DNA from: Bugula neritina
Taxonomy: Eukaryota; Animalia; Bryozoa
Length of the DNA stretch: 64,000 bases
Direction of reading: 5' to 3'
Assembly (NCBI GenBank): GCA_964035545.1
Contig: OZ037769.1
Coordinates: 2,108,001 to 2,172,000, forward strand
How positions within the stretch are numbered: the stretch's first letter is position 1; each line of letters opens with the position of its first letter. The position numbers and the translations under genes were made by a program. Under the pieces are notes generated by a model. The model ran no database searches. It was not told the DNA's origin and was given only the letters and a program-made list of their open reading frames with translations. Positions 763-40,303 of the stretch are shown here, in pieces.

Positions 763-3148
763 GTCTAATCAAGGAGAAACATGGTATAATGGGATACTTT
801 CAGTATGAAGGACTCACTCTATCCTCAACTATTCATAATGAAGATGTGATGAAGTCTATTAGAGATTATGATGACTTCAAACCAGATGATGTTATGCTAG
901 TCACTTATCCAAAGACAGGTGGTTGCTATATGCTTTAACTTTACTCTATTTCTACTGCCCTTTAGCCAAAAGACGAACTTATACTATATGATCGTTATCT
1001 AAATAATAACAGCTTAAATTTAAATGTCTGTTTTAGGAACACACTTTACTATTGGAATAATGACATCTATATATGAAGAAAAGAGGTTGATGACTCCGAA
1101 AAACGCAAACAACCACATGCCCCGTCTTGAAATGCCTCTCTTCTTAGGTAAATCTGGAGGTAATAAATTTTACTATCTTACAATAAAACTACAATAGTTT
1201 ATTATTGAAGTTTCTAAGTTTTTAGACAGTGTATAGATGCTACATTCATATATAGGGAAATACTGTAGAGCAATGCGTAAAATATTCTACAACATATACA
1301 TTGTATCTTTTTATAGTAATCTGAATTATTATATACACAATTCCTAAGATTTGAAAATGAATAATATTATTAAACTTATTGCATATAATAAATTGCCAAT
1401 ACACCAAGGCTGAAGATTTTTCTTTGACTTGTAATAAAAATATCCAAGTATATAGGCCTAATGAACAAAATTGATGTGGTAGAAATTAGAATAAAATTGT
1501 GAAAAATGTTGAGTGAGAAGTTATAATTTAGAATCATTGTTAAAAACATTATGAATCAATAATTAAATCATAGTTTCCTTCAAATAATGCATGTGCTAAT
1601 TTATTTTGATACAGTCTGAGGCTTGTATATACCAGCTTCACTGCAAGAAAAAATACCATTCGCTTTAGTTGTTACATAACTTGTGAGTAAATACTTTCAG
1701 GCAGCAAGAGAAGCAGCGACCCTTTAGCCTTCCTTGACAACATTCCTTCACCACGAGTCATTGTCACTCATCTGCCTTGGAACTTTCTTCCCTCCAGAGT
1801 AAGAGAAGGTAAAGTCAAGGTGAGTGCATGAGGTACGAATTTATTCTTCAGCATCGAGCAAACTTATACAACTACCGCCAATTGTATAGTTTATTTTATT
1901 TTCAATATTATACGCAGGTGATACACTGCATAAGGAACCCAAAGGATACAGTATGCAGCTATTTCCCATTTTTACAAAAAGTGAGAGTTTTAAGTTCTGC
2001 TGTCAGTTGGAAAACTTTCTTTGTTAATTTCATTGAAGGAAAAGGTAGGCACATATCACATTCTTTTGTCGACTGTTAGTAAAGCTTACATAAAATACTA
2101 TAGGAACTATAAATAGCAATAACTAAATTCAAAAGCTTCTTCAGATTTTATGGCTGCATCTATATTTATATATGTTAACAGCTTCAACCTGTATATATAT
2201 ACATTTATAAAATTTCTCGTTCACCTCCTTGAAACTATTGAAACTATGCATTAAAAGCATAATATTTTTTTAAACTTTACACTTATTACAGTTTGTGTAA
2301 TTGCTTCTGCAATATAATCATATACTAGATAAATTTAGTCTAAACAATTGAAAAGCTCAATTGAATATAATTATTATACTTTGTCATGAAAAGCACTTGG
2401 TTATAATATCATGTTCTGCTATAACAATCAAGCTAAGAATAAATTTGTGAGCAGATAATAAACAGCTTCCTTTTTTAGTATTGTATGGGAGTTATGCTCA
2501 CTTTATGAAGGAATGGTATCCATACAGAAACATGGAAACAGTTCTGAATATTCAATATGAGGAAATGAAGGAGGTGGGCCTAATTATTTGTTCTCGCTTT
2601 AAAATTGAAAAAAAGTAGAATAATATAATATAGACCGCTGAGGCTTTCTTTTTTTTCTAGTTTTACTATTTATTATAATATATCGGTCTGTGATTTTAGG
2701 ATTTAGAAAGCAATGTCAGAAAAATAGCAGAGTTTCTGAAACTAGATTTAACAAAAGAGCAGATTTGTAGAGTCACTGAGGCTAATACGTTTGAGAGCAA
2801 GAAGAAAGAGTTTGGAAGAGGCTGTGTCTTTTATAGAAAGGGTATGGTGATCTTGAGTAAATTTACTGTCTGTTATGTCATATATCGTCACATTCTGCTC
2901 TTTTTTGCCAAAGTCACAAAGCTTCGATAAATTTGCTTATAATTGCCTTGCTTGAAAAAAAACTTTAAAAAGTAGCCCTCCATTAAAATTCTAAACATAA
3001 TATCGAGTGCTGATTGTAATACATGCATGCAGGTAAGAGTGGAGGATGGAAAGCTGAGTTGACTGTAGAACAAAATGAAGTTATGGATGAATGGATAAAC
3101 ACAGAATTGGATGGATTGGAAGACTTGAAACTGGAATATGGAGAATAA
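763..3148 (+). CDS. Cytosolic-type sulfotransferase, copy 1 (5'-partial; exon 1 probably lies before the window). Exons 763-918, 1037-1147, 1701-1819, 1918-2044, 2479-2573, 2700-2841, 3033-3148
   Basis: Spliced frame gives the 5'-PSB loop TYPKTGTHF, catalytic His in RVIVTHLPW, the 3'-PB motif IRNPKDTVCS and C-terminal RKGKSGGWKAELTVEQNE (RKG plus KxxxTVxxxE dimerisation motif). All junctions are GT-AG and phase-compatible; stop TAA at 3146-3148. Confidence 0.93.
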
Positions 3149-3694
3149 ATCTAATGAAATTGTATTCTAGCATTTATATAGGTTAATAAACCTGGTGTGC
3201 TTAAAAATTAGCAAAAATGCAGACTAATAATAAAGCATATAATTTTAATGTTTGGAATAATTTTAAATATTCAACAAGTATTTATACTGATATGACCAAA
3301 TCCAATCAACTCATACTTGTACTGTAGTATATATTGTTATGGTGTGCATACAGTTGCATTTTTAAACCGTCTATAACTATAATATTTTCAACGTATATAT
3401 AATAAGCTTTGTTTCTACTATATTTCATATAGGAATGTTTTGAGTAGAAATCCAGAAAACAAAGACATTATTTTACCATGTTTATGCAATACAATCTAAG
3501 TTTTAAACATGCAGCAGTTTACTAGACAATAGCCTTGTCAAGTCTGACGCAGTTTGTGGTAGTCTGTTGAAAGTGATTCTATACGTGAGTTATTAGATCT
3601 GATGTTAGGGAGAGCACAATCTCTAACATGACAGTAACATATTATTGGGCAGATTATAGAAGGAAAAGTATTTCAACATTATAGCTTTGCTTAA

Positions 3695-28500: not shown

Positions 28501-29588
28501 ACAATATAATACAATATATCTGGTAGAATATAACATACATCGTATAATAATATAATATAATATAGTATAACGTATTATAAATATTTATTATAAATTGGTT
28601 AAGATCAGCGAGTTGCATGTTTGCCAAAGTCTAAACTCTAAAGATATAAAAGTATATACTGCATAAGACAAAAGACTGTCAACTTTTGACATAATAATGC
28701 AAGTGCCCTTACGCTGATGGCTGGTGACTTGCACACGGAGAATGTGAGAGACTTGGGACAGGTTGAGCTTCAGCCATTGGCCAGCCTCTTCTTTACTCTT
28801 AAAGTAGTTGAACTGTGAAAAGTTGCCGTCTACAGCCCGACTAGCGCATGTGAGGGAGTTGTCATAACATGAGCTACTTGAGACGGAAATACCAGCAGCT
28901 ACCTTAGCACCCTCTGAAAGTAGAACATAGTACAAATTATTGTAAACAAGTTATATATTATAATTTATACTCCAGACTTATGAATGACACTTTAATAAAA
29001 CGCAGTGATTTTTTGCTTCTAACAAACAAAAAGTTATATTTATATTTAAATAATGACAAAAGTATTTAAAATGGGTGTTGAGCACGTAGATGTAGTGGTC
29101 TAACAAGTGAAACAGATATAATTAAAAAAAACTTTTTGGTGATATTCTACATTTTATTACGATGACTATGATGTAATTATTAGTCTTACTATCTATTATT
29201 ATTGCAGTGTAAAAAAATTAACTATTGTTAGTGCATGCATGCTTGTCTAGCTAAGAGCAAACAGTAAACAAAAACAAACACTTGAAATTATAATATGAAG
29301 AATTCTCCCATTGCTATAAAAATTAGTTTATATATAGGTGAGGGTTGGCATTGCAGTTATACTGAAGTAAGCAGAAATTATTCGGTATGTTTATCAACAA
29401 AATTTATTTGGGAGGAAAAATTACATAATATGCAGAGATAGACTTTATATAATCAAGAAAAATGCAATATGGCTTCCAAAAACAATGAGGCTAATAACAA
29501 GTTCCAAAAACATAATAATTTACTTACCAAGCAGGTTAGCAGTGATGATATAAAAGAGAACTAGATAAATTATATTGACAGCTTTCAT
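22543..29588 (-). CDS. Type-I membrane receptor-like protein: signal peptide, 2x F5/8 type C/F-type-lectin-like, 2x FN3, sushi/CCP, TM, Tyr-rich cytoplasmic tail; ~11 exons
   Basis: Exon 1 29588-29528 MKAVNIIYLVLFYIITANLL; NVAYNKSVTCSS..AAVN..QWWMVSLG and ASRAVDGN..QWLKLNL (discoidin-like); PWNL..VNVSWDHP and VNFSVKAINDEG (FN3); CELPPQIINA..AVYSCEEGF..LTC..W..LPRC (CCP, 23519-23312); TM VSTGLVSLVLGLIIVITIWLY followed by HKRSRAKK. Confidence 0.85.
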
Positions 29589-30380
29589 ACTGACTACGTG
29601 CAGACTTAAAAGGGAGTGGACACTTAGAACAGGTTGCAGCTGGTGTATTGTGTAGAACACAATAAGAAAGAATGATACCATGTAGCAACAATTATTAGAG
29701 AATAAAATATGGAAATGATATTTAGTAAATGATGGATGACCAAATTTTATCTTTAGATAAGGGCTAATTACTTCATACAACGTGGCAAAAAACATACGTA
29801 TGCAGTGTTTAGAGAGTAAACTCTGAGTACGAATGTATAATAGGGTTTCCGAATAAGATAAACAGATATTTATTCGCTAGAGTTGACACAGGCCGCAAAT
29901 CAAAACATCTAATTCAAAATTCTAGATTTATAGCAATTATAAAAGCACTAAATGTTGACGAAACCTTTCCAACATCTTATGCTAATAAAAACAGAGAAGA
30001 ATGGAAGGTAATGGACTGTGCTGCAACTGTATGGAACAGGGTCCTAGCTTATAATTTGTTATAAATAATAAATTCACAATATAGTTAGAGGTTGTTTACA
30101 TGGAGAGAGCTATGTGATGTCAATGCAGCATGAGACACCCATTTAAAATATTTTATGACACCTACAAGACACATTGCATGACACCTAAGTGACCATTAAA
30201 ATATGTGGTGGTCATAATACGATATACTTAACCAGACGCAATGGTGGGCATTACAAACGAAGCACATTTATAGATATATTGTTTTAAAAGTTCTAAACTG
30301 AGAAAAAATTGGTATAGTGTAGCAACCCTTTCTTTAAAACAATGAAAGACGGATTGAAATTTTCAATAATAAATTATCTT

Positions 30381-33300
30381 TTAAAATTTCGAATGACCAA
30401 AAAGTATTTTTTTGAAATCCGGACTGCTCTCAAGTTTCTCCATTTTTATAGCGTATTGAATAAGTGCCAGATGACAGAATAGATATTGGTCTGGCATCTG
30501 TATGCTGAACGCCCTCTGTCTTCTAATGTTTCTCACTATTCTTTCAACATTAACTCTAGCTGTAGTTTCATACATGTCCAATGCAATGTCAATCGCAATA
30601 AATGTACCTACAAAATATATGTCCACATATTACTGACTGCATTTTCATTTCTGTTACAGTATTTAAAACCAGACCTCAAATTTTCAAATAAAATACGATG
30701 CATTTATCAGCTAGCTACAGAAAGGGCAAGACTTTTCACAATGTGTAGCAGGTAGTTCACATACCTGTACGCCCAATTCCTGCACTACAATGAACGATTA
30801 TTGGTGGCTTTGTAGAGTGGAGCTGAAATAAAATAAAATCTATGAAGAAAAAGTTAATAAAAATAAATTATTTAGTGCAATAAAAGGGGCAGTCGCGCAT
30901 TGATAAGAACATTTATTATTTTAAAAAACACAATATAATCACACTAACGTAGAACAAAAGTATTTTTAATGCAATTTTGTGTAAAAAAATAAAACAGTAA
31001 ACTGAGATGACCAATCATTTCAAACAAACGAAAGCAGATCTATACAAAAACATGTTGATAATGCAACAAAGAATGTGCAAAATTATATAAAAAAATTTCC
31101 AATAAATACTAAAAGAAAGCAATATGACTAATATCATACTTGTATACATCTAAATTATGGAATTTGGTTTATCTTGGAAGCACAGGTGAGTAGTTCACAG
31201 GTAAAAATTCATAGCGTGAGGGCAACAAAATTAGTCAACAGATAATAATGCTGAAATATCTTGAACAGCTTCTAATTTGCCCATCATTTTGGCATAGCGA
31301 ATGAGAGTGAGGTGACAGAAGAGGTACTGAGCTGGTGTCTCTACACTGAATGCCCTTTGATGTCTAATATTCTTCACAACTCGCTGGATGTTGGACAGCC
31401 CAGTGGCTTCATACATGTATAATGAGATGTCTATTGTTATCAATGTGCCTACAAAAACAATAACCTATGTAGAGATCTATACATCAAGAGCATGGTGAGT
31501 AAATAGTCTCACGCTGTGTTTTAGTAGAAAGTTTAGTAATTTTAGTATTCAAAACAAAGTTAGGTGCATATTAAAATAAATTCTACAAATTAAAATGCAT
31601 CATTCAGGGATCATTCATTCAACATGTTGCGACTTTTGTATCTTTATTGCACTATTGTGCTACGCATTTTAGACTTTCAATACATTAGGGGGAAATGGTA
31701 ACAAGCTAAGCATAGAAAAACTTCGTGTTATGCAAGAAATAAAAATAACTTACCTGTTCGACCGATTCCGGCGCTACAATGCACCAGAAGGGGATGTCCT
31801 TGCGAGCGACGCTAAAGCAAAAAATATTTCATGACCAAGTCATGCCGTGTGCAACAGACGAAATACTTTACTGCAAAAAAAGTCACTGCAGACGATTAAA
31901 TAATGAGGAAGTTGAAAGATGAACCTAAATCTCAGCGCATCAAGTCACGTGACCAGTCACCTGACATCAGTTTATATGTTATATAGTTAGATATTTTCCT
32001 AAGCAGCACTGACTAGATAAGAGTGATGGCGTGCAACTGGCATTTACAGGAAAACACAACTCACAATAGTATTAACAAAATTATTTGAAAACCAATGTCG
32101 TGATTAAATGATATCCAGTACCATTTTGATTATTACAACGACCAGGTACTAATTAAAATTTTATTTTGTTAAAAAAAATTGAATAAACAATGCATTGGAA
32201 AATCATTTATGTGAGTGAAACTTTAGTAAATTGATCAAGTAATAGTGTTGAGTATGAACAGACAGACTTAGAGCATGAACACGTAGGGGTCAATCTGTTG
32301 TATAAAAGGGGTTGCAACACTCGGACACTTTAATGGGAAACTCTTATGACAAGCATTTGCCATTATACAACAAAATATTCTTTAATTGCATCTGAGAAAA
32401 ATCTAGCTTGTGCATTTCATCTTTTACAATTCTACTTCTACTACTTTTAGCTATTATACTTGTGCTAGTTTATCACTGAATGGTGAATGAATCTTGTTTT
32501 GTGTAATAAAAAAGTTCTATACGTTTATGAGAATTGTTTGCTCAAAAGATAGATAAAAAAAGTTAAAACAAAGTTTATGTAAAGCAATGGCTGAGTTACA
32601 TTGAAATGAAGTCCATAAAAATAATTATTCTTCTCACCCAAGGATCTGTATATATGTGACTTCAAAGATATCATTATCATTTGCATCATACTTGGAACAG
32701 GAGAAAACAAAATGATTGAATTGTTGACTTTTACCCATGACAACCATAATGAACTAATACAAAAAAGCCCTACCAAAAACCATTACACTTCAAAAATATA
32801 AAATAATTTGCGATTATTCACATGTGAAAAATAATCATGGAATACACCAGGTTTGAATGCTCAATAATGCTTCTAGTAGACCGAGTTCTACGCTTACTTT
32901 TCTAATTAAGGATCAATTTCAACATTTCTACGGAACTAAATTAACACACACTAACTACGCGCACACACACACAGCTTACGATAAACACAGGTAACTCACC
33001 TTTATGTCCGCAGTGAAGTCACGCTGTGCTTTGCGAACCTCAAAGAGAAACTCCAGAAAACTGCTGGAATCTGCAGGAACTCCTTGATCTGGCCAACTGA
33101 GATACTGGAGGTGCTTTATGTGTCTCACCTCTTTAGTCTATGAAGAAATTGTGGTCAGAAGATATGATATACTCAATATTAGATATACAAGGCAGATAAT
33201 GGCTACATATATTATGTGTGCTTACCCAGTAAACAACCAACCAACTGTGAAAGGAACTAAAAGAACTTCACTCACGCAAATTTATAGTCACTTTCCCTGT

Positions 33301-35386
33301 TAGAGCGCTGAGGATAAATTGGTTAAAATCGGGCTAAAGACTTATTCATATGTAGGAGCAATTATGACTGGACGCTATTCCTAACATCACCAATAGCTTT
33401 TACTGGGAATCGAACTAAGAAAAAAGAAACTAAAGATGTTTAGTGACCTACCTCTTTATGAGTAGCTTCCAGCAGGGTGATCTGATAGTCTCCTTTGTTA
33501 GCTATACCCAAATTGACCACCTTAATCTTCCCATAATCCACAGTCTCCAGGGGTTCTAATGGCCAGTAGGCGTCACATTTTACTCTACCTCTTTCTGCCA
33601 GTCTAAAATATAATTTGTTTACATATTAAAGAGTATTAATCTATGGGTTCAATGACAATCTAAATACAAATAGCCAATTTGTGTGTGCTCGCAATCAACC
33701 TACCTCTATTGGTATTAGAAACAAAATATGCTATGTAATTCAAACTACCTAAATGTAAATTATAATCAAAACCCTAAACTAATTTTGCAACAAGCTGATG
33801 GAAATATATAACAAGATATCATTGCAATTTTCCGAAAACTAGTATACTAAAAACATGTGACTCTATCGAATAACTCACTTGGTTGTCATGACGATGACCC
33901 TGACATTCTCCTGGAAAATTAGTCTCCACTGATCTTTGACTGTGTGCTCTAGAGGTCCCTGAGTAGAGATGTATGCCTTCTTATGATCAAATCCATCCAC
34001 ATAGTTAGCATTGATATAGTCTGACTTATACGACTCCCCCTTCAATATCACACGACTCACGTCCAGACATAAAACGTCCGAGTAACGATTCTTTGACAAG
34101 TTCTCTGGTAATCTACATATCATGTTGGCGATAAATTCTTAAATGAAAGATTTACTACAAATTTACAAAATCTTACTAACATACCAGATACTAGAAGAAG
34201 TGTACTGCTTAGAGGTAATAAATAAAATTGTGAATATGATAAAACGAACACTCAGACAAAAAATTCTCAGTACTTCGATATTTCAATAAAAATTCATTTG
34301 ATTTACTTTGAAGTTTTAAAGTCCATTGCAGGCTCAGCTGACTTTAGTTCAAGGTATTCTCCAATCAAACCATGTCGACCTCTACTTTGGCAATGAGTGA
34401 TGAACTGCTGAATGGATTTGCTAGCATACACCCCGGGAAGACTACCATACTCAGACTTCAAGTGAGTGTTAGAATGTAATGCTGACTGTTTCCCTTTGAT
34501 CTGTTGTAAAAGTAGAAAACAACTAATGACTAGTAAATCATACTTCGCATAACTTCACCGACTGACGCTAGCTGAAGAACAATATTCTAGCATTATATAA
34601 GTACAGTTGCACTTTAGAATTTGAACTTGATCAGCGTGATATGAATATTTCGTTATACAGAAAATTGGTTGCCTGCACTTAAAGCAAACCTATAAACATG
34701 AAAATAATTCTAAGACATCAGCAGTGTACTCTTGGAGTGTATTTCAAATATATCAATAACTATGTCACAGGCCCAGCAAAAATGTGTCCTTATCCGTTTC
34801 AAAGTTATCAAAAATTAAGTCAACAGAATTCACGATCAACAAACTTGCCGTCAAATATAATAGACTACAGTATGATGCATTCTCTTAAATGTATAATAAA
34901 ATTAATTTTTGTTAGCATGCATGACAAATACTAGTTTAAGCTTCTCAAATACAGGAAAAATGTAATATAAATCAACTAGATATAAGACTGTACCTTGTAA
35001 CCAGTGGTCTTGCTAACTTCAAGTTGGGAAAGCTTTGCACACTGGCGAAAAGGTCCTGAAATTTATTTTGTCCATTAGAACACTATTTTTACTATGTCAG
35101 TGTACATGGACATATGTTTAGTACGAAATATACTAGCTTCAACTATACCAATCGTTATGACTACCAGAAAACTTATTTATTTTGCAGTATTTGTTTAAAA
35201 AAGTATTAAATTGATATTATTGGTCAAATGACTAACAGAAAATTTTTTTAACGGGCACACAAACAAGAATTAAGATCCTGTTCTACCTTTGAATATTGAC
35301 ATTTTCGAGCACGTGTGGTCTGGAGATGACCTCATTATTTGTAGACAGGCAAGCAAGTAGACTGCACTTGGCGAAGGAGTCTTCAT
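30381..35386 (-). CDS. Non-receptor protein tyrosine phosphatase B (PTPN9/MEG2-like catalytic domain) with two alternative 3' exon pairs: proximal 31811-31754 + 31448-31231, distal 30822-30765 + 30607-30381
   Basis: Shared exons 35386-35287, ~35055-34994, 34500-34307, ~34112-33879 (KNRYSDVLCLD..DYINAN..TQGP), ~33602-33452 (KCDAYWP), ~33137-33000 (WPDQGVP). Two HCSAGIGRTG exons and two QRAFS..QYLFC terminal exons, each with its own stop. Confidence 0.88.
33293..33418 (-). mobile_element. 5'-truncated copy of the tRNA-derived SINE, in a PTP-B intron
   Basis: gggctaaagacttatt...agcaattatgactggacgctattcctaacatcaccaatagc...gggaatcgaac matches ~39445-39535. Confidence 0.75.
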
Positions 35387-36373
35387 CCTTACACAATCAG
35401 AACTAGGTAGCTTGGTTTTGTCTAAGAAAATTCAAAATGAAGAATATCTCAAAATCTCAAACGAACTATGAATAAAACTCGTACAGCGATTATATTTAAT
35501 TAAAATCAATGTTCACAGACAATGCGAATATCAATAGTCACAGTGATAGAGTTAAACATCAACATGAATATGTGTATAGCTATTACTATAAGTATATCAA
35601 TATGAATATTTGTAGCAATACTAATAATAAGTAATATTCATATTCATATTGTATATTAAATCCCAATTCCAAGACCAATGAACTCACCAATCACCAATGT
35701 GAATATCAATTTGAATATGAATACCTTTCTTGTCCAATTAAGGAAATTTTTATTTGTGATCTAACAAAAAATTAAGTCAACTTCGTATTCATGCAGCTGC
35801 ATGATTTACGTTCAGTGGTATTACTCTGATATGTATCATAAATTCTAGAATTTGTCCAGAGTAGTACCGTTAGTACGTCTGCCGATTGCAATTGTAGTGA
35901 TCTCCATAAATTAGTAATTAAAGCGAAACTACTCATACTACAAAAATATTACTGTGCTCGCTGATGATAGATAAATAATATTTTAAAATGAGCCGGCTTT
36001 ACGATATAAATACTGATAATGATTGCGACAATCTACAGGATTGAATACGAACACCTCTGATTTTACCTGAAAATCTATTGCTTGAAGAAACAACTCCTAA
36101 CACAGTACGACCTGCAAGTATTGCATTCTTCCTTTGCAAATGTTGTATTTATTACCTTAAATGTAGCTGAAATGAATAATCACAGTAGAGTATTCTTCAG
36201 TCAAATAATATACGTGTTGAGTTAAATCTGTTGAGACACGAATTTCCGAAATATTATATTCTCCAACTTTATTCAAAGTTCTGAGTCGCACCATGAAACA
36301 AATTGTCAAAAATAGACTTACAATCAATCTGATTAGCTATGATACTTTCAAAATCAATCATCTCAAGCAAAAA

Positions 36374-39300
36374 TCAATCATCAAACAATAGTTCTTGAAA
36401 GTCTATGTTAGTTTTTAGTTTCCCCATTTTTATAGCGTATTGAATGAGTGCCAGATGACAGAACAGATATTGGTCAGGCATCTGAATGCTGAACGCCCTC
36501 TGTCTTCTAATGTTCCTCACTATTTTGATGATGTTGGTTTTAGCTGTAGCGTCAAACATGTACACCGATATATCCACAGCAATGAAAGTTCCTACAAAAT
36601 AGTAAACATACTTCAGCCATAATCACAGAGAAATATTAAAAAATTTATACAAAATAATTGCCATAAATAGTTTCCTTCATAAATTATAAAATATGAACCA
36701 CAAACCTGTTCGCCCGATACCAGCACTGCAATGCACCACAATAGGAGGGCCTCTAGGGTGAAGCTAAAATAAAAAAACAAGTTATTTTACAAAAAATAAT
36801 ACAAACTTATACTAATTGTGATATCACTCTAAAACAAGTAAATGGAGTGTTTATTAAAGCTTTGCATTCAAAATGGCATCAACAAACAATATCATTTTTA
36901 AATATCCAACACTTACAACACTGTGTTTATATAACATTACATGTATTAGCTTATATAATACTTCTTTGATCTATAAAATATTCTATTATTTCATAAAATA
37001 TTGCATCAGTTTATAAAATATTGCGATAGTTTAGAACAAAAACAATGGTGGCTAATGTACCTTCCAGTTGATTCCTTTTGTGAATTCATGCTGAGCTTTT
37101 CTCACGTGAAAAAGAAACTTGAGAAATCCGTTGGCGTCTGGTGGAACCCCGTAGTCCGGCCAGCTCAGGAAAAGGAAGTGCTTCATCTTTCTTACCTCTA
37201 GAGTCTGAGAAACAAAAACAGTAACACAAGAATGGAGTGGAGAGGTAGTACGCATAGAAAAGGTGGTGAAGCCAATAGATTAGACGATTTCTGTTTCACA
37301 TAGGATTGACTGATTGATTACATATCACAGACACGAAAACACATCGTGGAACTCAGTGTAAATACTGGTCATCATAAGTAGATGTGAACAAAAGTAGAGA
37401 AAAAAAAACACATAAAGTTAGGACTTTGTTGGATTATTTAAAAAGATCATTTAAAGTAATTACAAAGTGTCGTAAAAACTATCCATGCCCCATGCTCTTT
37501 TATGGAAATGCCTAAGAACTTTACAATTTTCGGTCCTACATCTGATACTCTAAACTAAAAGAAGCCAGTGTTTGAGAACATCTACCTGACAGTCATATAT
37601 AAACTGTATATCACAAGGTGTACCTCTTTATGAGTAGCTTCCAGCAGAGTGATCTGATAGTCTCCTTTGTTAGCTATACCCAGATTAACCACCTTAATCT
37701 TCCCATAATCCACAGTCTCCAGGGGTTCTAACGGCCAGTATGCGTCACACTTTATACGACCTCTTTCTGCCAGTCTAAAATAAAAATGTGTAATACTTGA
37801 ATACCATTCAGAATATATCAATGACAAAACCATCATAAAATAATGCTATATGTTAGGAAGCTTTCTGAAAACTATAAATTCACAGATTACACGAATCTTT
37901 CGAAACATCATGGCATCGAAGATTAGGGTTAATGAAAAAAAGAGTGTTTAGCTTATAAGTATATTTGGCTCTGCAAAGAAATTATTGTTGAAAATCAGCA
38001 CATGAAAAACAGAAGCTGGTAAAAAATAGCAGGTTCAAACTAGTTGGGAAACCCAGGGAAATTCCGGCACATCATTATAATACTTATGCAATGTGCTAGA
38101 AACAGTGGGACTTTGCACCCAATTCCTGTATAATAGCTACTAGGTTGACTTTTGTATATGTGGGTGTATATGCGGGTGTATACACGTGGATGGGAAAGTG
38201 GGTGTGCGTGTGATGAACACATTGGTGTGTGCTTCTGTGAGTTCGTGTGAGTGTCATCATTGAATGAAATTAAAACCTTAGTCCGGAAAAAAGCTCAATC
38301 GCCATAAGTGACAGAATAAGGATTTTAAAAGTTAATAACATTTTAATCCTAATATCTTAAATCACTAACTTATAATATCAAAGGCTATGATATACTTAAT
38401 AAAATACTGAAGGTGAAGTCAACCTTACACTAAGCAGTAAAGTATTTCCTAGCACTCAACACAGTTTGTGACTGCAGCAAATGACTCACTTGGTTGTCAT
38501 GACGATGACCCTGACATTCTCCTGAAAAATTAGTCTCCACTGATCTTTGACTGTGTGCTCTAGAGGTCCCTGAGTAGAGATGTATGCCTTCTTATGATCA
38601 AATCCATCCACATAGTTAGCATTGATATAGTCTGACTCATACGACTCCCCCTTCAATATCACACGACTCACGTCCAGACATAGTACGTCTGCGTAACGAT
38701 TCTTTGACATGTTTTTTGACATCCTACAAATCATACTCACAACAATTACTAGTTATAGTAAAAACAGCAATATGAAGTGTTTAAATAAAACTTAAATAGA
38801 ATCATAAATGAAAATTTGTCATAAACCACTTTTAATTAGTTGTTCAGTTTTTTATTTATTACTAGTAATTTCGTGAATTAAGAGAAAAACTAAAACAGCA
38901 ATGATAATCTTGTCAATCAAAATAAATAAAAGTGAGTAAAGAGTTAGTCAAAACAAAAACGCCTCAAAAACACACTTTTACGATAAAAACTAGGCAGAAA
39001 AAAATATAGAAATAGTGAGCAATACTATAATAATCAGGTTTCTGAATCCTGCAAATAAAAGGCATATACTGGTTGCTAAATCAATATCTATCTACAAAGT
39101 GCGACTGACCTTGAAGTTCTAAAGTCCATAGCCGGTTCAGATGCCTTCAAATCATAATACTCATCAATCAAACCAGTTCTGCCCTTGACCTTACACTTGT
39201 CTACCAGCTGATTGATGTCTTTACCCGTATACAAGTTAGCTAGGGCACCGTAGGCGGGCTGAGAGGATGGGGGAGAGGAGGAAGCTAGGGCTGTGGCTAT

Positions 39301-40303
39301 CTGTTTCTCCTTATCTTCCTACAAACTAAGGTTATGTAGTTCTGTGGCTGTGTTGGCATCAAATATACATAATTAAAAAGCTCATGCCAGTTTATAGTCG
39401 CTATCCCTGTGAGAACCTTTAATGTAAAAGATTTTAGTTAAATTGGGCTAAAGACTTATTTAGATGAGGCACAGAAGCAATTATGACTGGATGCTCTTCC
39501 TAACATCATCAATGGCCTTTAATGGGGTTCGAACCCATGACTTCGTGCTTATTAGGCAAACGCATTAACCCCTAGACCACGACTTCTCTGGATATAATAT
39601 AAAGTAACAAGTGACTACCAGCTAAAGATCAATCAACTGTATATGCAGGGCTGATTCAGTAAGTTAATTCTCTTTGCTTATATGATGTTGGATATAAAAA
39701 CATGAGTAGCCAACTCCCTTGAAAGTAACATTACAACACAAGTTATCTCTCTAGAAAAGTGAGTAATGGAAGTAAAGACTGAGAACTGCAGAATGAGTTG
39801 CTCACCTTTATACTCTTCTGCAGATTGGCAGGTATGTCAGCCAGAGTCTGGTACGACTCTGCACCTCTTTTCAGAGGCCCTAAAAGTCACAGAAAACTTT
39901 TATATTGAGAAGACAAATCCAATGCAGAGTTTAATCTGTCAAATGCAGATATAATTTAGCTATGCTGATTGTGATTTGTCAATTAAAATTATACTACATA
40001 TAATGTACTATATGTAGTACATTATATATAGTATAATGTACTACATATAGTACAATGGACATGTCATAGTACATTTAGTAAATACACTAGGACTACACTA
40101 CACACTACATAGACTATAGCACCACCTACTATATATATAACACATGCAATATATTATGGCATATCAATACCTGCTGAGTTACGCTTTTTCCGCTTGATCT
40201 CTTCAAGATCGTCTAAGCCCATGCTAGACTTCATAGCCTTGAGCTCTCCAGCAGTTGGCTGCTTCATTTCACTCATTTTGGGGTTTTGCTTTGAACTAAG
40301 CAT
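36374..40303 (-). CDS. Non-receptor protein tyrosine phosphatase A (PTPN9/MEG2-like catalytic domain, short N-terminus), ~8 coding exons
   Basis: KNRYADVLCLD, DYINANYVDG, TQGP, KCDAYWP, WPDYGVP, HPRGPPIVVHCSAGIGRTG (36763-36706), RRQRAFSIQMPDQYLFC; N-terminus MLSSKQNPKMSEMKQ..KRKKR. Start codon uncertain (40303 or 40276). Confidence 0.9.
39394..39588 (-). mobile_element. tRNA-derived SINE, most complete copy in the window, in a PTP-A intron
   Basis: Minus strand has A-box-like TGGTCTAGGGG, anticodon-loop-like CTAATAA and B-box GGTTCGAACCC, followed by a non-tRNA body that recurs at ~33300 and ~21400. Confidence 0.8.

What the first reader, a model, noticed from the sequence alone, without database searches (positions are those of the whole stretch)
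30381..33137. Tyrosine phosphatase with two interchangeable catalytic half-domain cassettes (canonical Q-loop vs Gln->Glu Q-loop)
Seen: after the single WPD-loop exon (ends ...ADIK| at 33000, phase 0) come two complete exon pairs. Each has a 58-nt phase-0/phase-1 P-loop exon with intact HCSAGIGRTG, then a terminal exon with its own stop. Proximal pair (31811-31754, 31448-31231): RRSQGHPLLVHCSAGIGRTG..RHQRAFSVETPAQY. Distal pair (30822-30765, 30607-30381): LHSTKPPIIVHCSAGIGRTG..RRQRAFSIQMPDQY. All splice sites are canonical, neither pair has a frameshift or premature stop, and a minus-strand AATAAA (30917-30912) lies between them. I found no N-terminal PTP exons belonging only to the distal pair. 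Established: the Q-loop Gln (PTP1B Gln262) positions the water that hydrolyses the phospho-cysteine intermediate, and mutating it slows turnover. Inference: alternative 3'-terminal splicing/polyadenylation builds two enzymes from one N-terminal half, one conventional and one slow, substrate-holding or phosphotransferring. That would switch the active site itself rather than a targeting tail.
Basis: partly seen in the sequence, partly recalled or inferred. Interest (0 to 1): 0.85.

Follow-up and report, generated by a model that had tools for sequence, protein, structure and literature searches.

The report
Phosphatase gene with two catalytic endings
A tyrosine phosphatase gene, very likely of the bryozoan Bugula neritina, carries two complete, conserved and expressed copies of the exons for the catalytic second half of the enzyme, so it probably makes two enzymes with different active sites, although the splice that would make the second form has not yet been seen.

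Summary
Downstream of one WPD-loop exon (33137-33000, minus strand) lie two P-loop plus terminal exon pairs. The proximal pair has Glu at the PTP1B Gln262 position; the distal pair has the canonical Gln.

A 3.2-kb contig from a sibling lineage (L001) has the same layout. Every splice site and reading frame is intact. The exons have no indels, against 29 indel events in the introns. dN/dS is 0.25-0.32 (proximal) and 0.18-0.19 (distal). The Glu is conserved.

Spliced RNA contigs show the joints WPD to proximal P-loop, proximal P-loop to terminal, and distal P-loop to terminal. The WPD to distal joint was not seen. It was barely detectable, because the RNA comes from the sibling lineage, whose WPD exon end falls just below the matching threshold. 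Contig geometry suggests that the distal acceptor is used and that the WPD exon has two continuations.

The gene is a Sec14-less PTPN9/MEG2-like paralogue, next to a single-ending paralogue with which it exchanges sequence.

Best reading (about 0.6): alternative last-exon pairs swap the catalytic half. Any kinetic consequence is untested. Mis-assembly and a silent remnant are largely excluded.

The parts
35286..35398 (-). Upstream exon of gene B (probable start codon region)
   Evidence: RNA contig joints 35054/35286 in X1, X2 and X5. The frame with Met codons runs on into the next exons.
34994..35054 (-). Upstream exon of gene B
   Evidence: RNA joints to 34500/34503 and to 35286.
34307..34500 (-). 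Exon 0, N-terminal lead-in of the phosphatase domain
   Evidence: Acceptor AG at 34502-34501. Joint 34112/34307 in three RNA runs. No Pfam hit.
33879..34112 (-). Exon 1: KNRY phosphotyrosine-recognition loop and DYINA motif
   Evidence: PF00102 positions 1-74, 100.8 bits. 95% DNA identity to gene A, dS 0.12.
33452..33602 (-). Exon 2 (KCDAYWP)
   Evidence: PF00102 positions 77-123. Joints 33602/33879 and 33137/33452.
33000..33137 (-). Single WPD-loop exon, ends in phase 0
   Evidence: PF00102 positions 130-166. dN/dS 0.045 against L001. RNA contigs of X1 and X5 stop exactly at 33000; the X2 contig runs on into the proximal P-loop exon.
31754..31811 (-). Proximal P-loop exon (HCSAGIGRTG)
   Evidence: RNA joint 31811/33000 in X2 and joint 31447/31753 in X2 and X5.
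31231..31448 (-). Proximal terminal exon with its own stop; Q-loop reads VETPAQY (Glu at the PTP1B Gln262 position)
   Evidence: PF00102 positions 185-233. Glu conserved in L001; proximal pair dN/dS 0.25-0.32.
30912..30917 (-). AATAAA between the two pairs, candidate poly(A) signal of the proximal form
   Evidence: Present and conserved in L001. Its use was not tested.
30765..30822 (-). Distal P-loop exon (HCSAGIGRTG)
   Evidence: 57/58 bases identical in L001 against 13.4% neutral divergence (P = 0.002). RNA joint to the distal terminal exon in X1 and X5.
30381..30607 (-). Distal terminal exon with its own stop; canonical Q-loop SIQMPDQY
   Evidence: PF00102 positions 185-233. Distal pair dN/dS 0.18-0.19.
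30433..30540 (-). 108-base core of the distal terminal exon, 94% identical to gene A between flanks of 53-62%: probable gene-conversion tract
36374..39318 (-). Gene A, the tandem paralogue with a single ending (context and conversion partner)
   Evidence: Groups with fragments from other contigs (P0002, P0006/L002, P0007; source organisms not identified) in the tree.

Best explanation
Gene B is a lineage-specific, Sec14-less PTPN9/MEG2-like tyrosine phosphatase gene. One N-terminal half (exons up to the WPD-loop exon) can be completed by either of two homologous two-exon endings. Each ending encodes the P-loop, the Q-loop and the last helices, and each has its own stop codon.

- If the WPD donor at 33000 joins the near acceptor at 31811, and the transcript ends at a poly(A) site between the pairs, the product has Glu at the Q-loop water-positioning site.
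- If the proximal pair is skipped and the donor joins 30822, the product has the canonical Gln and a different tail.

Both endings are kept by selection. This is an alternative-last-exon system built from old tandem duplicates. It would change the chemistry-bearing half of the active site, not a targeting tail.

Shown: the architecture, its conservation, purifying selection, expression of both pairs, and the WPD to proximal joint.
Inferred: the WPD to distal joint, and any difference in catalysis.
For: 1. Sequence and phases are exactly as described. Both pairs map to the same Pfam positions.
2. The sibling-lineage contig L001 is colinear over 3.1 kb, with every splice site and frame intact. 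The exons have no indels, against 29 indel events in 2238 non-coding bases (P about 0.03 per pair).
3. dN/dS is 0.25-0.32 for the proximal pair and 0.18-0.19 for the distal pair. In simulations, the chance of so few amino-acid changes and no stop is 4.5e-4 and 2.4e-3.
4. The distal result holds outside the tract shared with gene A: w = 0.18, P = 0.018. The distal P-loop exon is 57/58 identical, P = 0.002.
5. RNA contigs with GT..AG joints at every intron occur in X1, X2 and X5 and not in the DNA run X6. They include 33000/31811, 31448/31754 and 30607/30765. The X1 variants match L001 at 16 of 17 sites and differ from the window at the 17th too, so the RNA comes from this locus in the sibling lineage.
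6. The 200-letter X5 contig has 110 letters in the distal terminal exon and 63 on the distal P-loop exon. About 27 further letters do not continue into the well-conserved genomic sequence upstream. So the distal acceptor is used, and the contig starts about k-1 letters (taking the contigs to be 31-mer unitigs, my assumption) into a shared, branching exon (inference).
7. The WPD-exon contigs end exactly at 33000 in the two runs that express the distal pair (X1, X5). In X2, which shows no distal RNA, the contig reads through into the proximal pair.
8. The distal P-loop exon starts at an acceptor in phase 0 and has no start codon of its own. The only WPD exons in the region are gene B's and gene A's.
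Against: - The joint 33000/30822 was not seen in any of four runs.
- The contigs are from a sibling lineage, not from the window's own strain. Only contigs were available, not raw reads.
- A 108-base core of the distal terminal exon is 94% identical to gene A. Gene conversion therefore contributes to its conservation.
- Only two genomes could be compared.
- Proximal-pair DNA identity (88%) equals intron identity, so its constraint shows only in the ratio of amino-acid-changing to silent differences.
- X2 expresses only the proximal form.
- No protein or full-length transcript of this gene exists in the searched protein collections.
Confidence: 0.6

Rival explanations
1. The distal pair is functional but belongs to another transcript. 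It is spliced to gene A's WPD exon (ending at 37061, also phase 0, also ending AAG) or to an unrecognised upstream exon. Gene B would then make only the Glu form, and gene A or a chimera would have the two endings.
For: The distal pair is A-like and carries a 94%-identical tract shared with A. About 27 letters upstream of the distal P-loop exon in the X5 contig could not be placed within 29901-35900, and gene A lies outside that stretch. Both WPD exons end in AAG, so the contig geometry cannot tell them apart.
Against: It needs a 6.2-kb intron spanning all of gene B and its promoter. WPD_B contigs break at 33000 exactly in the runs that express the distal pair. The unplaced letters are explained by three differences in the last 27 bases of the sibling's WPD_B exon, which gives 88.9% against the 90% cut.
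Confidence: 0.15
2. The distal pair is the remnant of a third tandem paralogue that lost its 5' half. It is transcribed and spliced as part of read-through or non-productive RNA and makes no protein. Its apparent conservation comes from gene conversion by gene A and from short divergence time.
For: Conversion tract with A. No 5' exons of its own. The joint to the WPD exon is unseen. X2 shows no distal RNA.
Against: Outside the conversion tract, dN/dS is still 0.18, with fewer substitutions than introns (P = 0.007). The P-loop exon, which is only 70% identical to A's, is 98% conserved. There are no indels or stops in either lineage. In the tree the distal branch splits from A before A splits from its counterparts on other contigs, so it has survived a long time. 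The X5 contig geometry indicates that its acceptor is used, rather than read-through.
Confidence: 0.1
3. Both forms are made, but the Glu for Gln change has little effect on chemistry. The forms would differ mainly in stability, substrate preference or their different C-terminal tails. Alternatively, the Glu form is a low-activity, pseudophosphatase-like binder.
For: The pairs differ at about 40% of residues, including the tails. Glu at this site recurs in other natural MEG2-like proteins, some with altered WPD loops (WPE, WSD).
Against: No tool here measures activity. The Gln262 position is described as key for catalysis (PMC9266312). In gene B all other catalytic motifs (WPD, HCSAGIGRTG, the second Gln) are intact.
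Confidence: 0.3
4. Assembly artefact: a collapsed or mis-joined third phosphatase gene.
For: Tandem paralogues and a high-copy repeat lie nearby.
Against: An independent contig from a sibling lineage has the identical order and spacing. DNA contigs of X6 that are identical to the window cover both flanks of the space between the pairs, at 30784-31059 and 31100-31302.
Confidence: 0.02

Closest known systems
PTPN9 / PTP-MEG2 catalytic domain
   Same: PTPN9 is the best solved-structure match for the terminal exon and the best single-domain match for exon 1. The Q-loop context RAFS(I/V)(Q/E)(T/M)PxQY is shared, and all classical PTP motifs are present.
   Different: There is no Sec14/CRAL-TRIO domain at this locus. 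The genome's Sec14-plus-PTP gene lies on another chromosome (C1, about 12.42 Mb). Genes A and B are tandem, lineage-restricted paralogues. In the tree they form a clade apart from MEG2-like proteins (100/100).
Alternative exons born by tandem exon duplication, and alternative last exons (for example PKM exons 9/10, KHK exons 3A/3C, FGFR2 IIIb/IIIc; from my own knowledge)
   Same: Homologous duplicated exons of equal length and phase, used one or the other, replace part of a functional site while the rest of the protein is shared.
   Different: The unit here is a two-exon terminal pair with its own stop and probably its own poly(A) site. It replaces the nucleophile loop and the water-positioning loop of a phosphatase. 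One of the two joints is still unobserved.
Engineered Q-loop mutants of PTP1B (Gln262) and YopH (Gln446/450) (from my own knowledge; role of Gln262 as in PMC9266312)
   Same: The same active-site position is changed. In those mutants the second step, hydrolysis of the phospho-enzyme, is affected.
   Different: This is a natural Glu, conserved in two lineages under purifying selection, next to a canonical alternative in the same gene. Its kinetics are unknown.
Other natural Glu-variant MEG2-like phosphatases in sequence collections (P0097, P0102, P0114, P0117, P0123, P0125)
   Same: They read VET or IET in place of IQT/IQM in the same Q-loop context.
   Different: They are separate proteins of unknown organisms, two of them with altered WPD loops. 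None is known to share a gene with a canonical ending.

Membership tests
Classical protein tyrosine phosphatase domain (Pfam PF00102) | Profile match above the curated cut-off across the domain | tested here: met
   Exons 1, 2, WPD and both terminal exons score 21.6-100.8 bits against a cut-off of 20.9. They cover positions 1-166 and, twice, 185-233.
Classical protein tyrosine phosphatase domain (Pfam PF00102) | P-loop HCxxGxxR with the nucleophilic Cys | tested here: met
   HCSAGIGRTG in both P-loop exons, identical in L001.
Classical protein tyrosine phosphatase domain (Pfam PF00102) | WPD loop with the general acid Asp, and the KNRY recognition loop | tested here: met
   LSWPDQGVP and SKNRYSDV.
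Classical protein tyrosine phosphatase domain (Pfam PF00102) | First Q-loop glutamine (PTP1B Gln262) | tested here: not met
   Not met in the proximal pair, which has Glu (aligned to the IQT of PTPN9). Met in the distal pair (SIQMPDQY). The second Gln is present in both.
PTPN9 / PTP-MEG2 subfamily | N-terminal Sec14/CRAL-TRIO domain joined to the phosphatase domain | tested here: not met
   No PF00650 match near the window on C5. One lies beside phosphatase exons at C1:12422978-12427166. The upstream exons of A and B have no Pfam hit.
Alternative last exons derived from tandem duplication | Two homologous exon sets with the same phases, each complete to a stop | tested here: met
   Both P-loop exons are 58 bases, phase 0 to 1.
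Alternative last exons derived from tandem duplication | Both joints from the shared upstream exon seen in RNA | tested here: inconclusive
   33000/31811 is seen (X2). 33000/30822 is not seen. Short flanks from the sibling lineage fall at 88.9% identity, below the 90% cut.
Alternative last exons derived from tandem duplication | Both sets kept by selection in related genomes | tested here: met
   (one sibling lineage only).
Alternative last exons derived from tandem duplication | Use of a poly(A) site between the sets | not testable with these tools
   A conserved AATAAA lies at 30917-30912. Contigs cannot show RNA ends.

The most novel reading that the evidence does not exclude
One gene switches its own active-site chemistry by choice of last exons. 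The canonical Gln form would be an ordinary fast phosphatase. The conserved Glu form would have an altered second catalytic step (long-lived phospho-enzyme, substrate holding, shifted pH dependence, or transfer to acceptors other than water). The two would be expressed differently between tissues or stages.
Probability: 0.22. Interest if true: 0.75.

Novelty: new variant of a known kind. Interest (0 to 1): 0.55.

Why it matters
Alternative splicing of phosphatases is known mainly to change targeting or regulatory tails. Here the exchanged module would carry the nucleophile loop and the water-positioning loop.

That would be a natural experiment on the role of the Q-loop glutamine: the same N-terminal half paired with a Gln ending or a Glu ending, both kept by selection.

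It would also give a clear case of how partial gene duplication and fusion within a tandem array can create alternative catalytic modules. The same array shows patchy gene conversion keeping some exons alike.

It is directly testable with existing bryozoan RNA data and simple enzymology.

Tried and rejected
**Searches that did not answer the question**
- Protein search with the distal terminal exon gave only four fragments. One (P0001) led to the useful sibling contig L001. No transcript-derived protein was found.
- The exhaustive representative search with the proximal terminal exon found no full-length product of gene B. The only close relative is the L001 fragment.
- The metagenome scan gave six loci. 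L002 holds gene A's counterpart from another, unidentified source, but ends 340 bases after the stop, so it cannot show whether a B-type gene follows. L003 and L005 are Sec14-containing MEG2 transcripts.
- The scan's earlier notes near this place were empty. Notes found by words only gave the organism lead.
- The literature searches found no report of a natural Q262E-type enzyme and none of a phosphatase whose catalytic exons are swapped.

**Readings considered and rejected**
- Mis-assembly: rejected by L001 and the X6 contigs.
- Retrogene or DNA copy of the spliced form: no spliced joints occur in DNA run X6.
- Read-through in which the distal intron is removed inside a long 3'UTR: the X5 contig leaves the genome at the distal acceptor.
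- Exon 2 joined directly to the distal P-loop exon: this is in frame, but the joint was not seen although it would have been detectable.
- The joint 30540/33452 (X1, X5) as a real cryptic splice: gene A is 94% identical to the distal exon exactly from 30540 downward, and identical to B over the last 24 bases of exon 2. Cross-mapping of gene A transcripts explains it.

All searches were exon by exon, by reference. No 3D model of either form was made.

Full report
**Source**

The window is G000:C5:2108001-2172000 of a 216,009,554-base eukaryotic genome. A published assembly of the bryozoan Bugula neritina is 216.00 Mb (PMC11480708). The one related contig I found carries the label AY690838, which is the B. 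neritina mitochondrial genome accession (PMC2678162). Earlier notes of this scan reached the same organism. I therefore treat the organism as very likely B. neritina.

**The observation**

| Exon | Coordinates | Content |
|---|---|---|
| WPD-loop exon | 33137-33000 | ends in phase 0 |
| Proximal P-loop exon | 31811-31754 | HCSAGIGRTG |
| Proximal terminal exon | 31448-31231 | RAFSVETPAQY, own stop |
| Distal P-loop exon | 30822-30765 | HCSAGIGRTG |
| Distal terminal exon | 30607-30381 | RAFSIQMPDQY, own stop |

- Alignment to solved PTPN9 chains places the Glu on the first Q-loop glutamine, PTP1B Gln262.
- Pfam puts both terminal exons on positions 185-233 of PF00102. The upstream exons cover positions 1-166 once.

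**Context**

Two tandem phosphatase genes lie on the minus strand.

- Gene A (about 39318-36374) has one ending.
- Gene B has upstream exons at 35398-35286, 35054-34994 and 34500-34307. Then come exon 1 (34112-33879), exon 2 (33602-33452), the WPD exon and the two endings. RNA joints and the sequence confirm these boundaries.
- Neither gene has a Sec14 domain. The genome's Sec14-plus-phosphatase (MEG2-type) gene is on C1 near 12.42 Mb.
- The nearest relatives of the proximal terminal exon anywhere in the genome are gene A's terminal exon and the distal one, both at 57%. The proximal pair therefore arose within this local family.

**History**

A and B are a mosaic.

- Exons 1 and 2 are 94-95% identical in DNA (dS 0.12-0.24), although the introns do not align.
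- The WPD exons are 62% identical in protein, with dS saturated.
- The proximal terminal exon is 56% identical to A's in protein.
- The distal terminal exon is 71% identical overall. It consists of a 108-base core (30540-30433) that is 94% identical to A, between flanks of 62% and 53%.
- The sharp edges indicate patchy gene conversion between the paralogues.

A tree of the terminal exons, with MEG2-like proteins as outgroup, gives (proximal, (distal, (A plus fragments P0002, P0006 and P0007 from other contigs))). The group as a whole has 100/100 support and the inner forks 91-94%. Both endings are therefore old lineages. The WPD exon and the proximal pair share the oldest divergence class. The simplest origin is a fusion of two neighbouring paralogues with loss of the 5' half of the downstream one. 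This origin is inference.

**Conservation**

P0001 led to L001, a 3198-base contig that is colinear with window 33558-30376.

- Non-coding divergence is 13.4%, with 29 indel events in 2238 aligned bases.
- The five exons have no indel. All splice sites, both stops and the AATAAA at 30917-30912 are kept.

| Exon set | dN/dS (NG86 / ML) |
|---|---|
| WPD exon | 0.045 |
| Proximal pair | 0.25 / 0.32 |
| Distal pair | 0.18 / 0.19 |

- I placed the observed number of substitutions at random. The chance of so few amino-acid changes and no stop is 4.5e-4 for the proximal pair and 2.4e-3 for the distal pair.
- Gene conversion by A could mimic constraint, so I repeated the test without the shared core. 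The rest of the distal pair still has w = 0.18 (P = 0.018) and fewer substitutions than introns (P = 0.007).
- The distal P-loop exon is only 70% identical to A's, yet it is 57/58 conserved between the two lineages (P = 0.002).
- The Glu codon is GAG in both lineages.
- A silent-remnant reading is therefore hard to hold.

**RNA**

One run search and one laying of 6,000 letters were allowed.

- Runs X1, X2 and X5 hold contigs that skip every intron of gene B with GT..AG ends. The DNA run X6 has none of these joints. X1, X2 and X5 are therefore cDNA.
- The X1 variants agree with L001 at 16 of 17 listed sites and differ from the window at the 17th too. The RNA therefore comes from this locus in the sibling lineage.
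- Joints seen: 33000/31811 (X2), 31448/31754 (X2, X5) and 30607/30765 (X1, X5).
- Joint not seen: 33000/30822.

This absence is weak evidence. In the sibling lineage the last 27 bases of the WPD exon carry three differences, which gives 88.9% identity. That is below the 90% cut I had set.

Three indirect signs favour the two-ending model.

- The 200-letter X5 contig has 110 letters in the distal terminal exon and 63 on the distal P-loop exon. About 27 more letters do not follow the well-conserved genomic sequence upstream. The distal acceptor is therefore used. Taking these contigs to be 31-mer unitigs (my assumption), the contig starts about one k-1 overlap into an upstream exon that branches.
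- The WPD-exon contigs end exactly at 33000 in X1 and X5, the runs with distal RNA. In X2, which has no distal RNA, one contig runs from the proximal terminal exon through the whole WPD exon.
- The distal P-loop exon begins in phase 0 and has no start codon of its own. Its perfect protein conservation shows that it is translated. The only phase-compatible WPD exons nearby are B's, 2.2 kb upstream, and A's, 6.2 kb upstream.

The joint 30540/33452 (X1, X5) is best explained by gene A transcripts mapping onto B's exon 2 and onto the shared core, which begins at 30540.

**Function**

The role of Gln262 in positioning for catalysis is established (PMC9266312). What a natural Glu does at that position is unknown. 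All other catalytic motifs of gene B are intact.

Glu at this site is not unique. Six other proteins among 126 representative relatives have VET or IET, two of them with altered WPD loops. The two endings also differ at about 40% of residues and in their tails. A difference in chemistry is thus plausible but is only one of several possible differences.

**Verdict**

Two conserved, expressed catalytic endings in one gene are real, and their alternative use from one WPD exon is likely (about 0.6), but the decisive joint is unobserved.
- This is a new variant of a known kind: alternative exons born by duplication, here a terminal two-exon module carrying the phosphatase active-site loops.
- I found no published precedent for such a swap in a tyrosine phosphatase. 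The searched library is incomplete.

Noticed in passing
window 33879-34112 and 33452-33602 versus 38489-38722 and 37621-37785; 30433-30540 versus 36417-36524: There is patchy gene conversion between tandem paralogues A and B. Exons 1 and 2 and a 108-base core of the distal terminal exon are 94-95% identical. Neighbouring exon parts and introns are saturated or do not align.
   Followed up: partly
window 33271-33415 and 39381-39534: A short interspersed repeat has word depth of about 100,000 in every run. Its loose ends resemble tRNA-derived SINE sequence. One copy sits in intron 2 of gene B and one upstream of gene A.
   Followed up: no
window 32577-32726 and 32813-32903: Blocks in the intron between the WPD exon and the proximal P-loop exon are 90-97% identical to the sibling contig, against about 87% for introns overall. 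They could be splice-choice elements. No RNA coverage was seen there.
   Followed up: no
window 33000: One X6 DNA contig carries a 6-base insertion at the last codons of the WPD exon. It stays in frame (DIK becomes DINLK). The two extra residues match the length of gene A's exon end.
   Followed up: no
window 28591-28950 and 29901-30300: Downstream on the minus strand is an open frame with weak, sub-threshold similarity to F5/8 type C (discoidin) domains. RNA contigs cover 29901-30124 and run on to lower coordinates. This is either a neighbouring gene or a long 3'UTR of the distal form.
   Followed up: no
proteins P0097, P0102, P0114, P0117, P0123, P0125: Natural MEG2-like phosphatase fragments from unknown organisms carry Glu at the Gln262 position. 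P0123 also has WPE and P0125 has WSD in place of WPD.
   Followed up: partly
G000:C1:12422978-12427166: The genome's probable true PTPN9/MEG2 orthologue: a CRAL-TRIO match followed by phosphatase exons on the same strand.
   Followed up: partly
L001 2147-2364 versus 2966-3192: In the sibling lineage the proximal and distal terminal exons are more alike (68% protein identity) than in the window (57%). At 5 of the 11 sites where the two proximal copies differ, the sibling's proximal residue matches its own distal copy. This points to conversion between the two pairs, or to faster change of the proximal pair in the window's lineage. The Glu is kept either way.
   Followed up: partly
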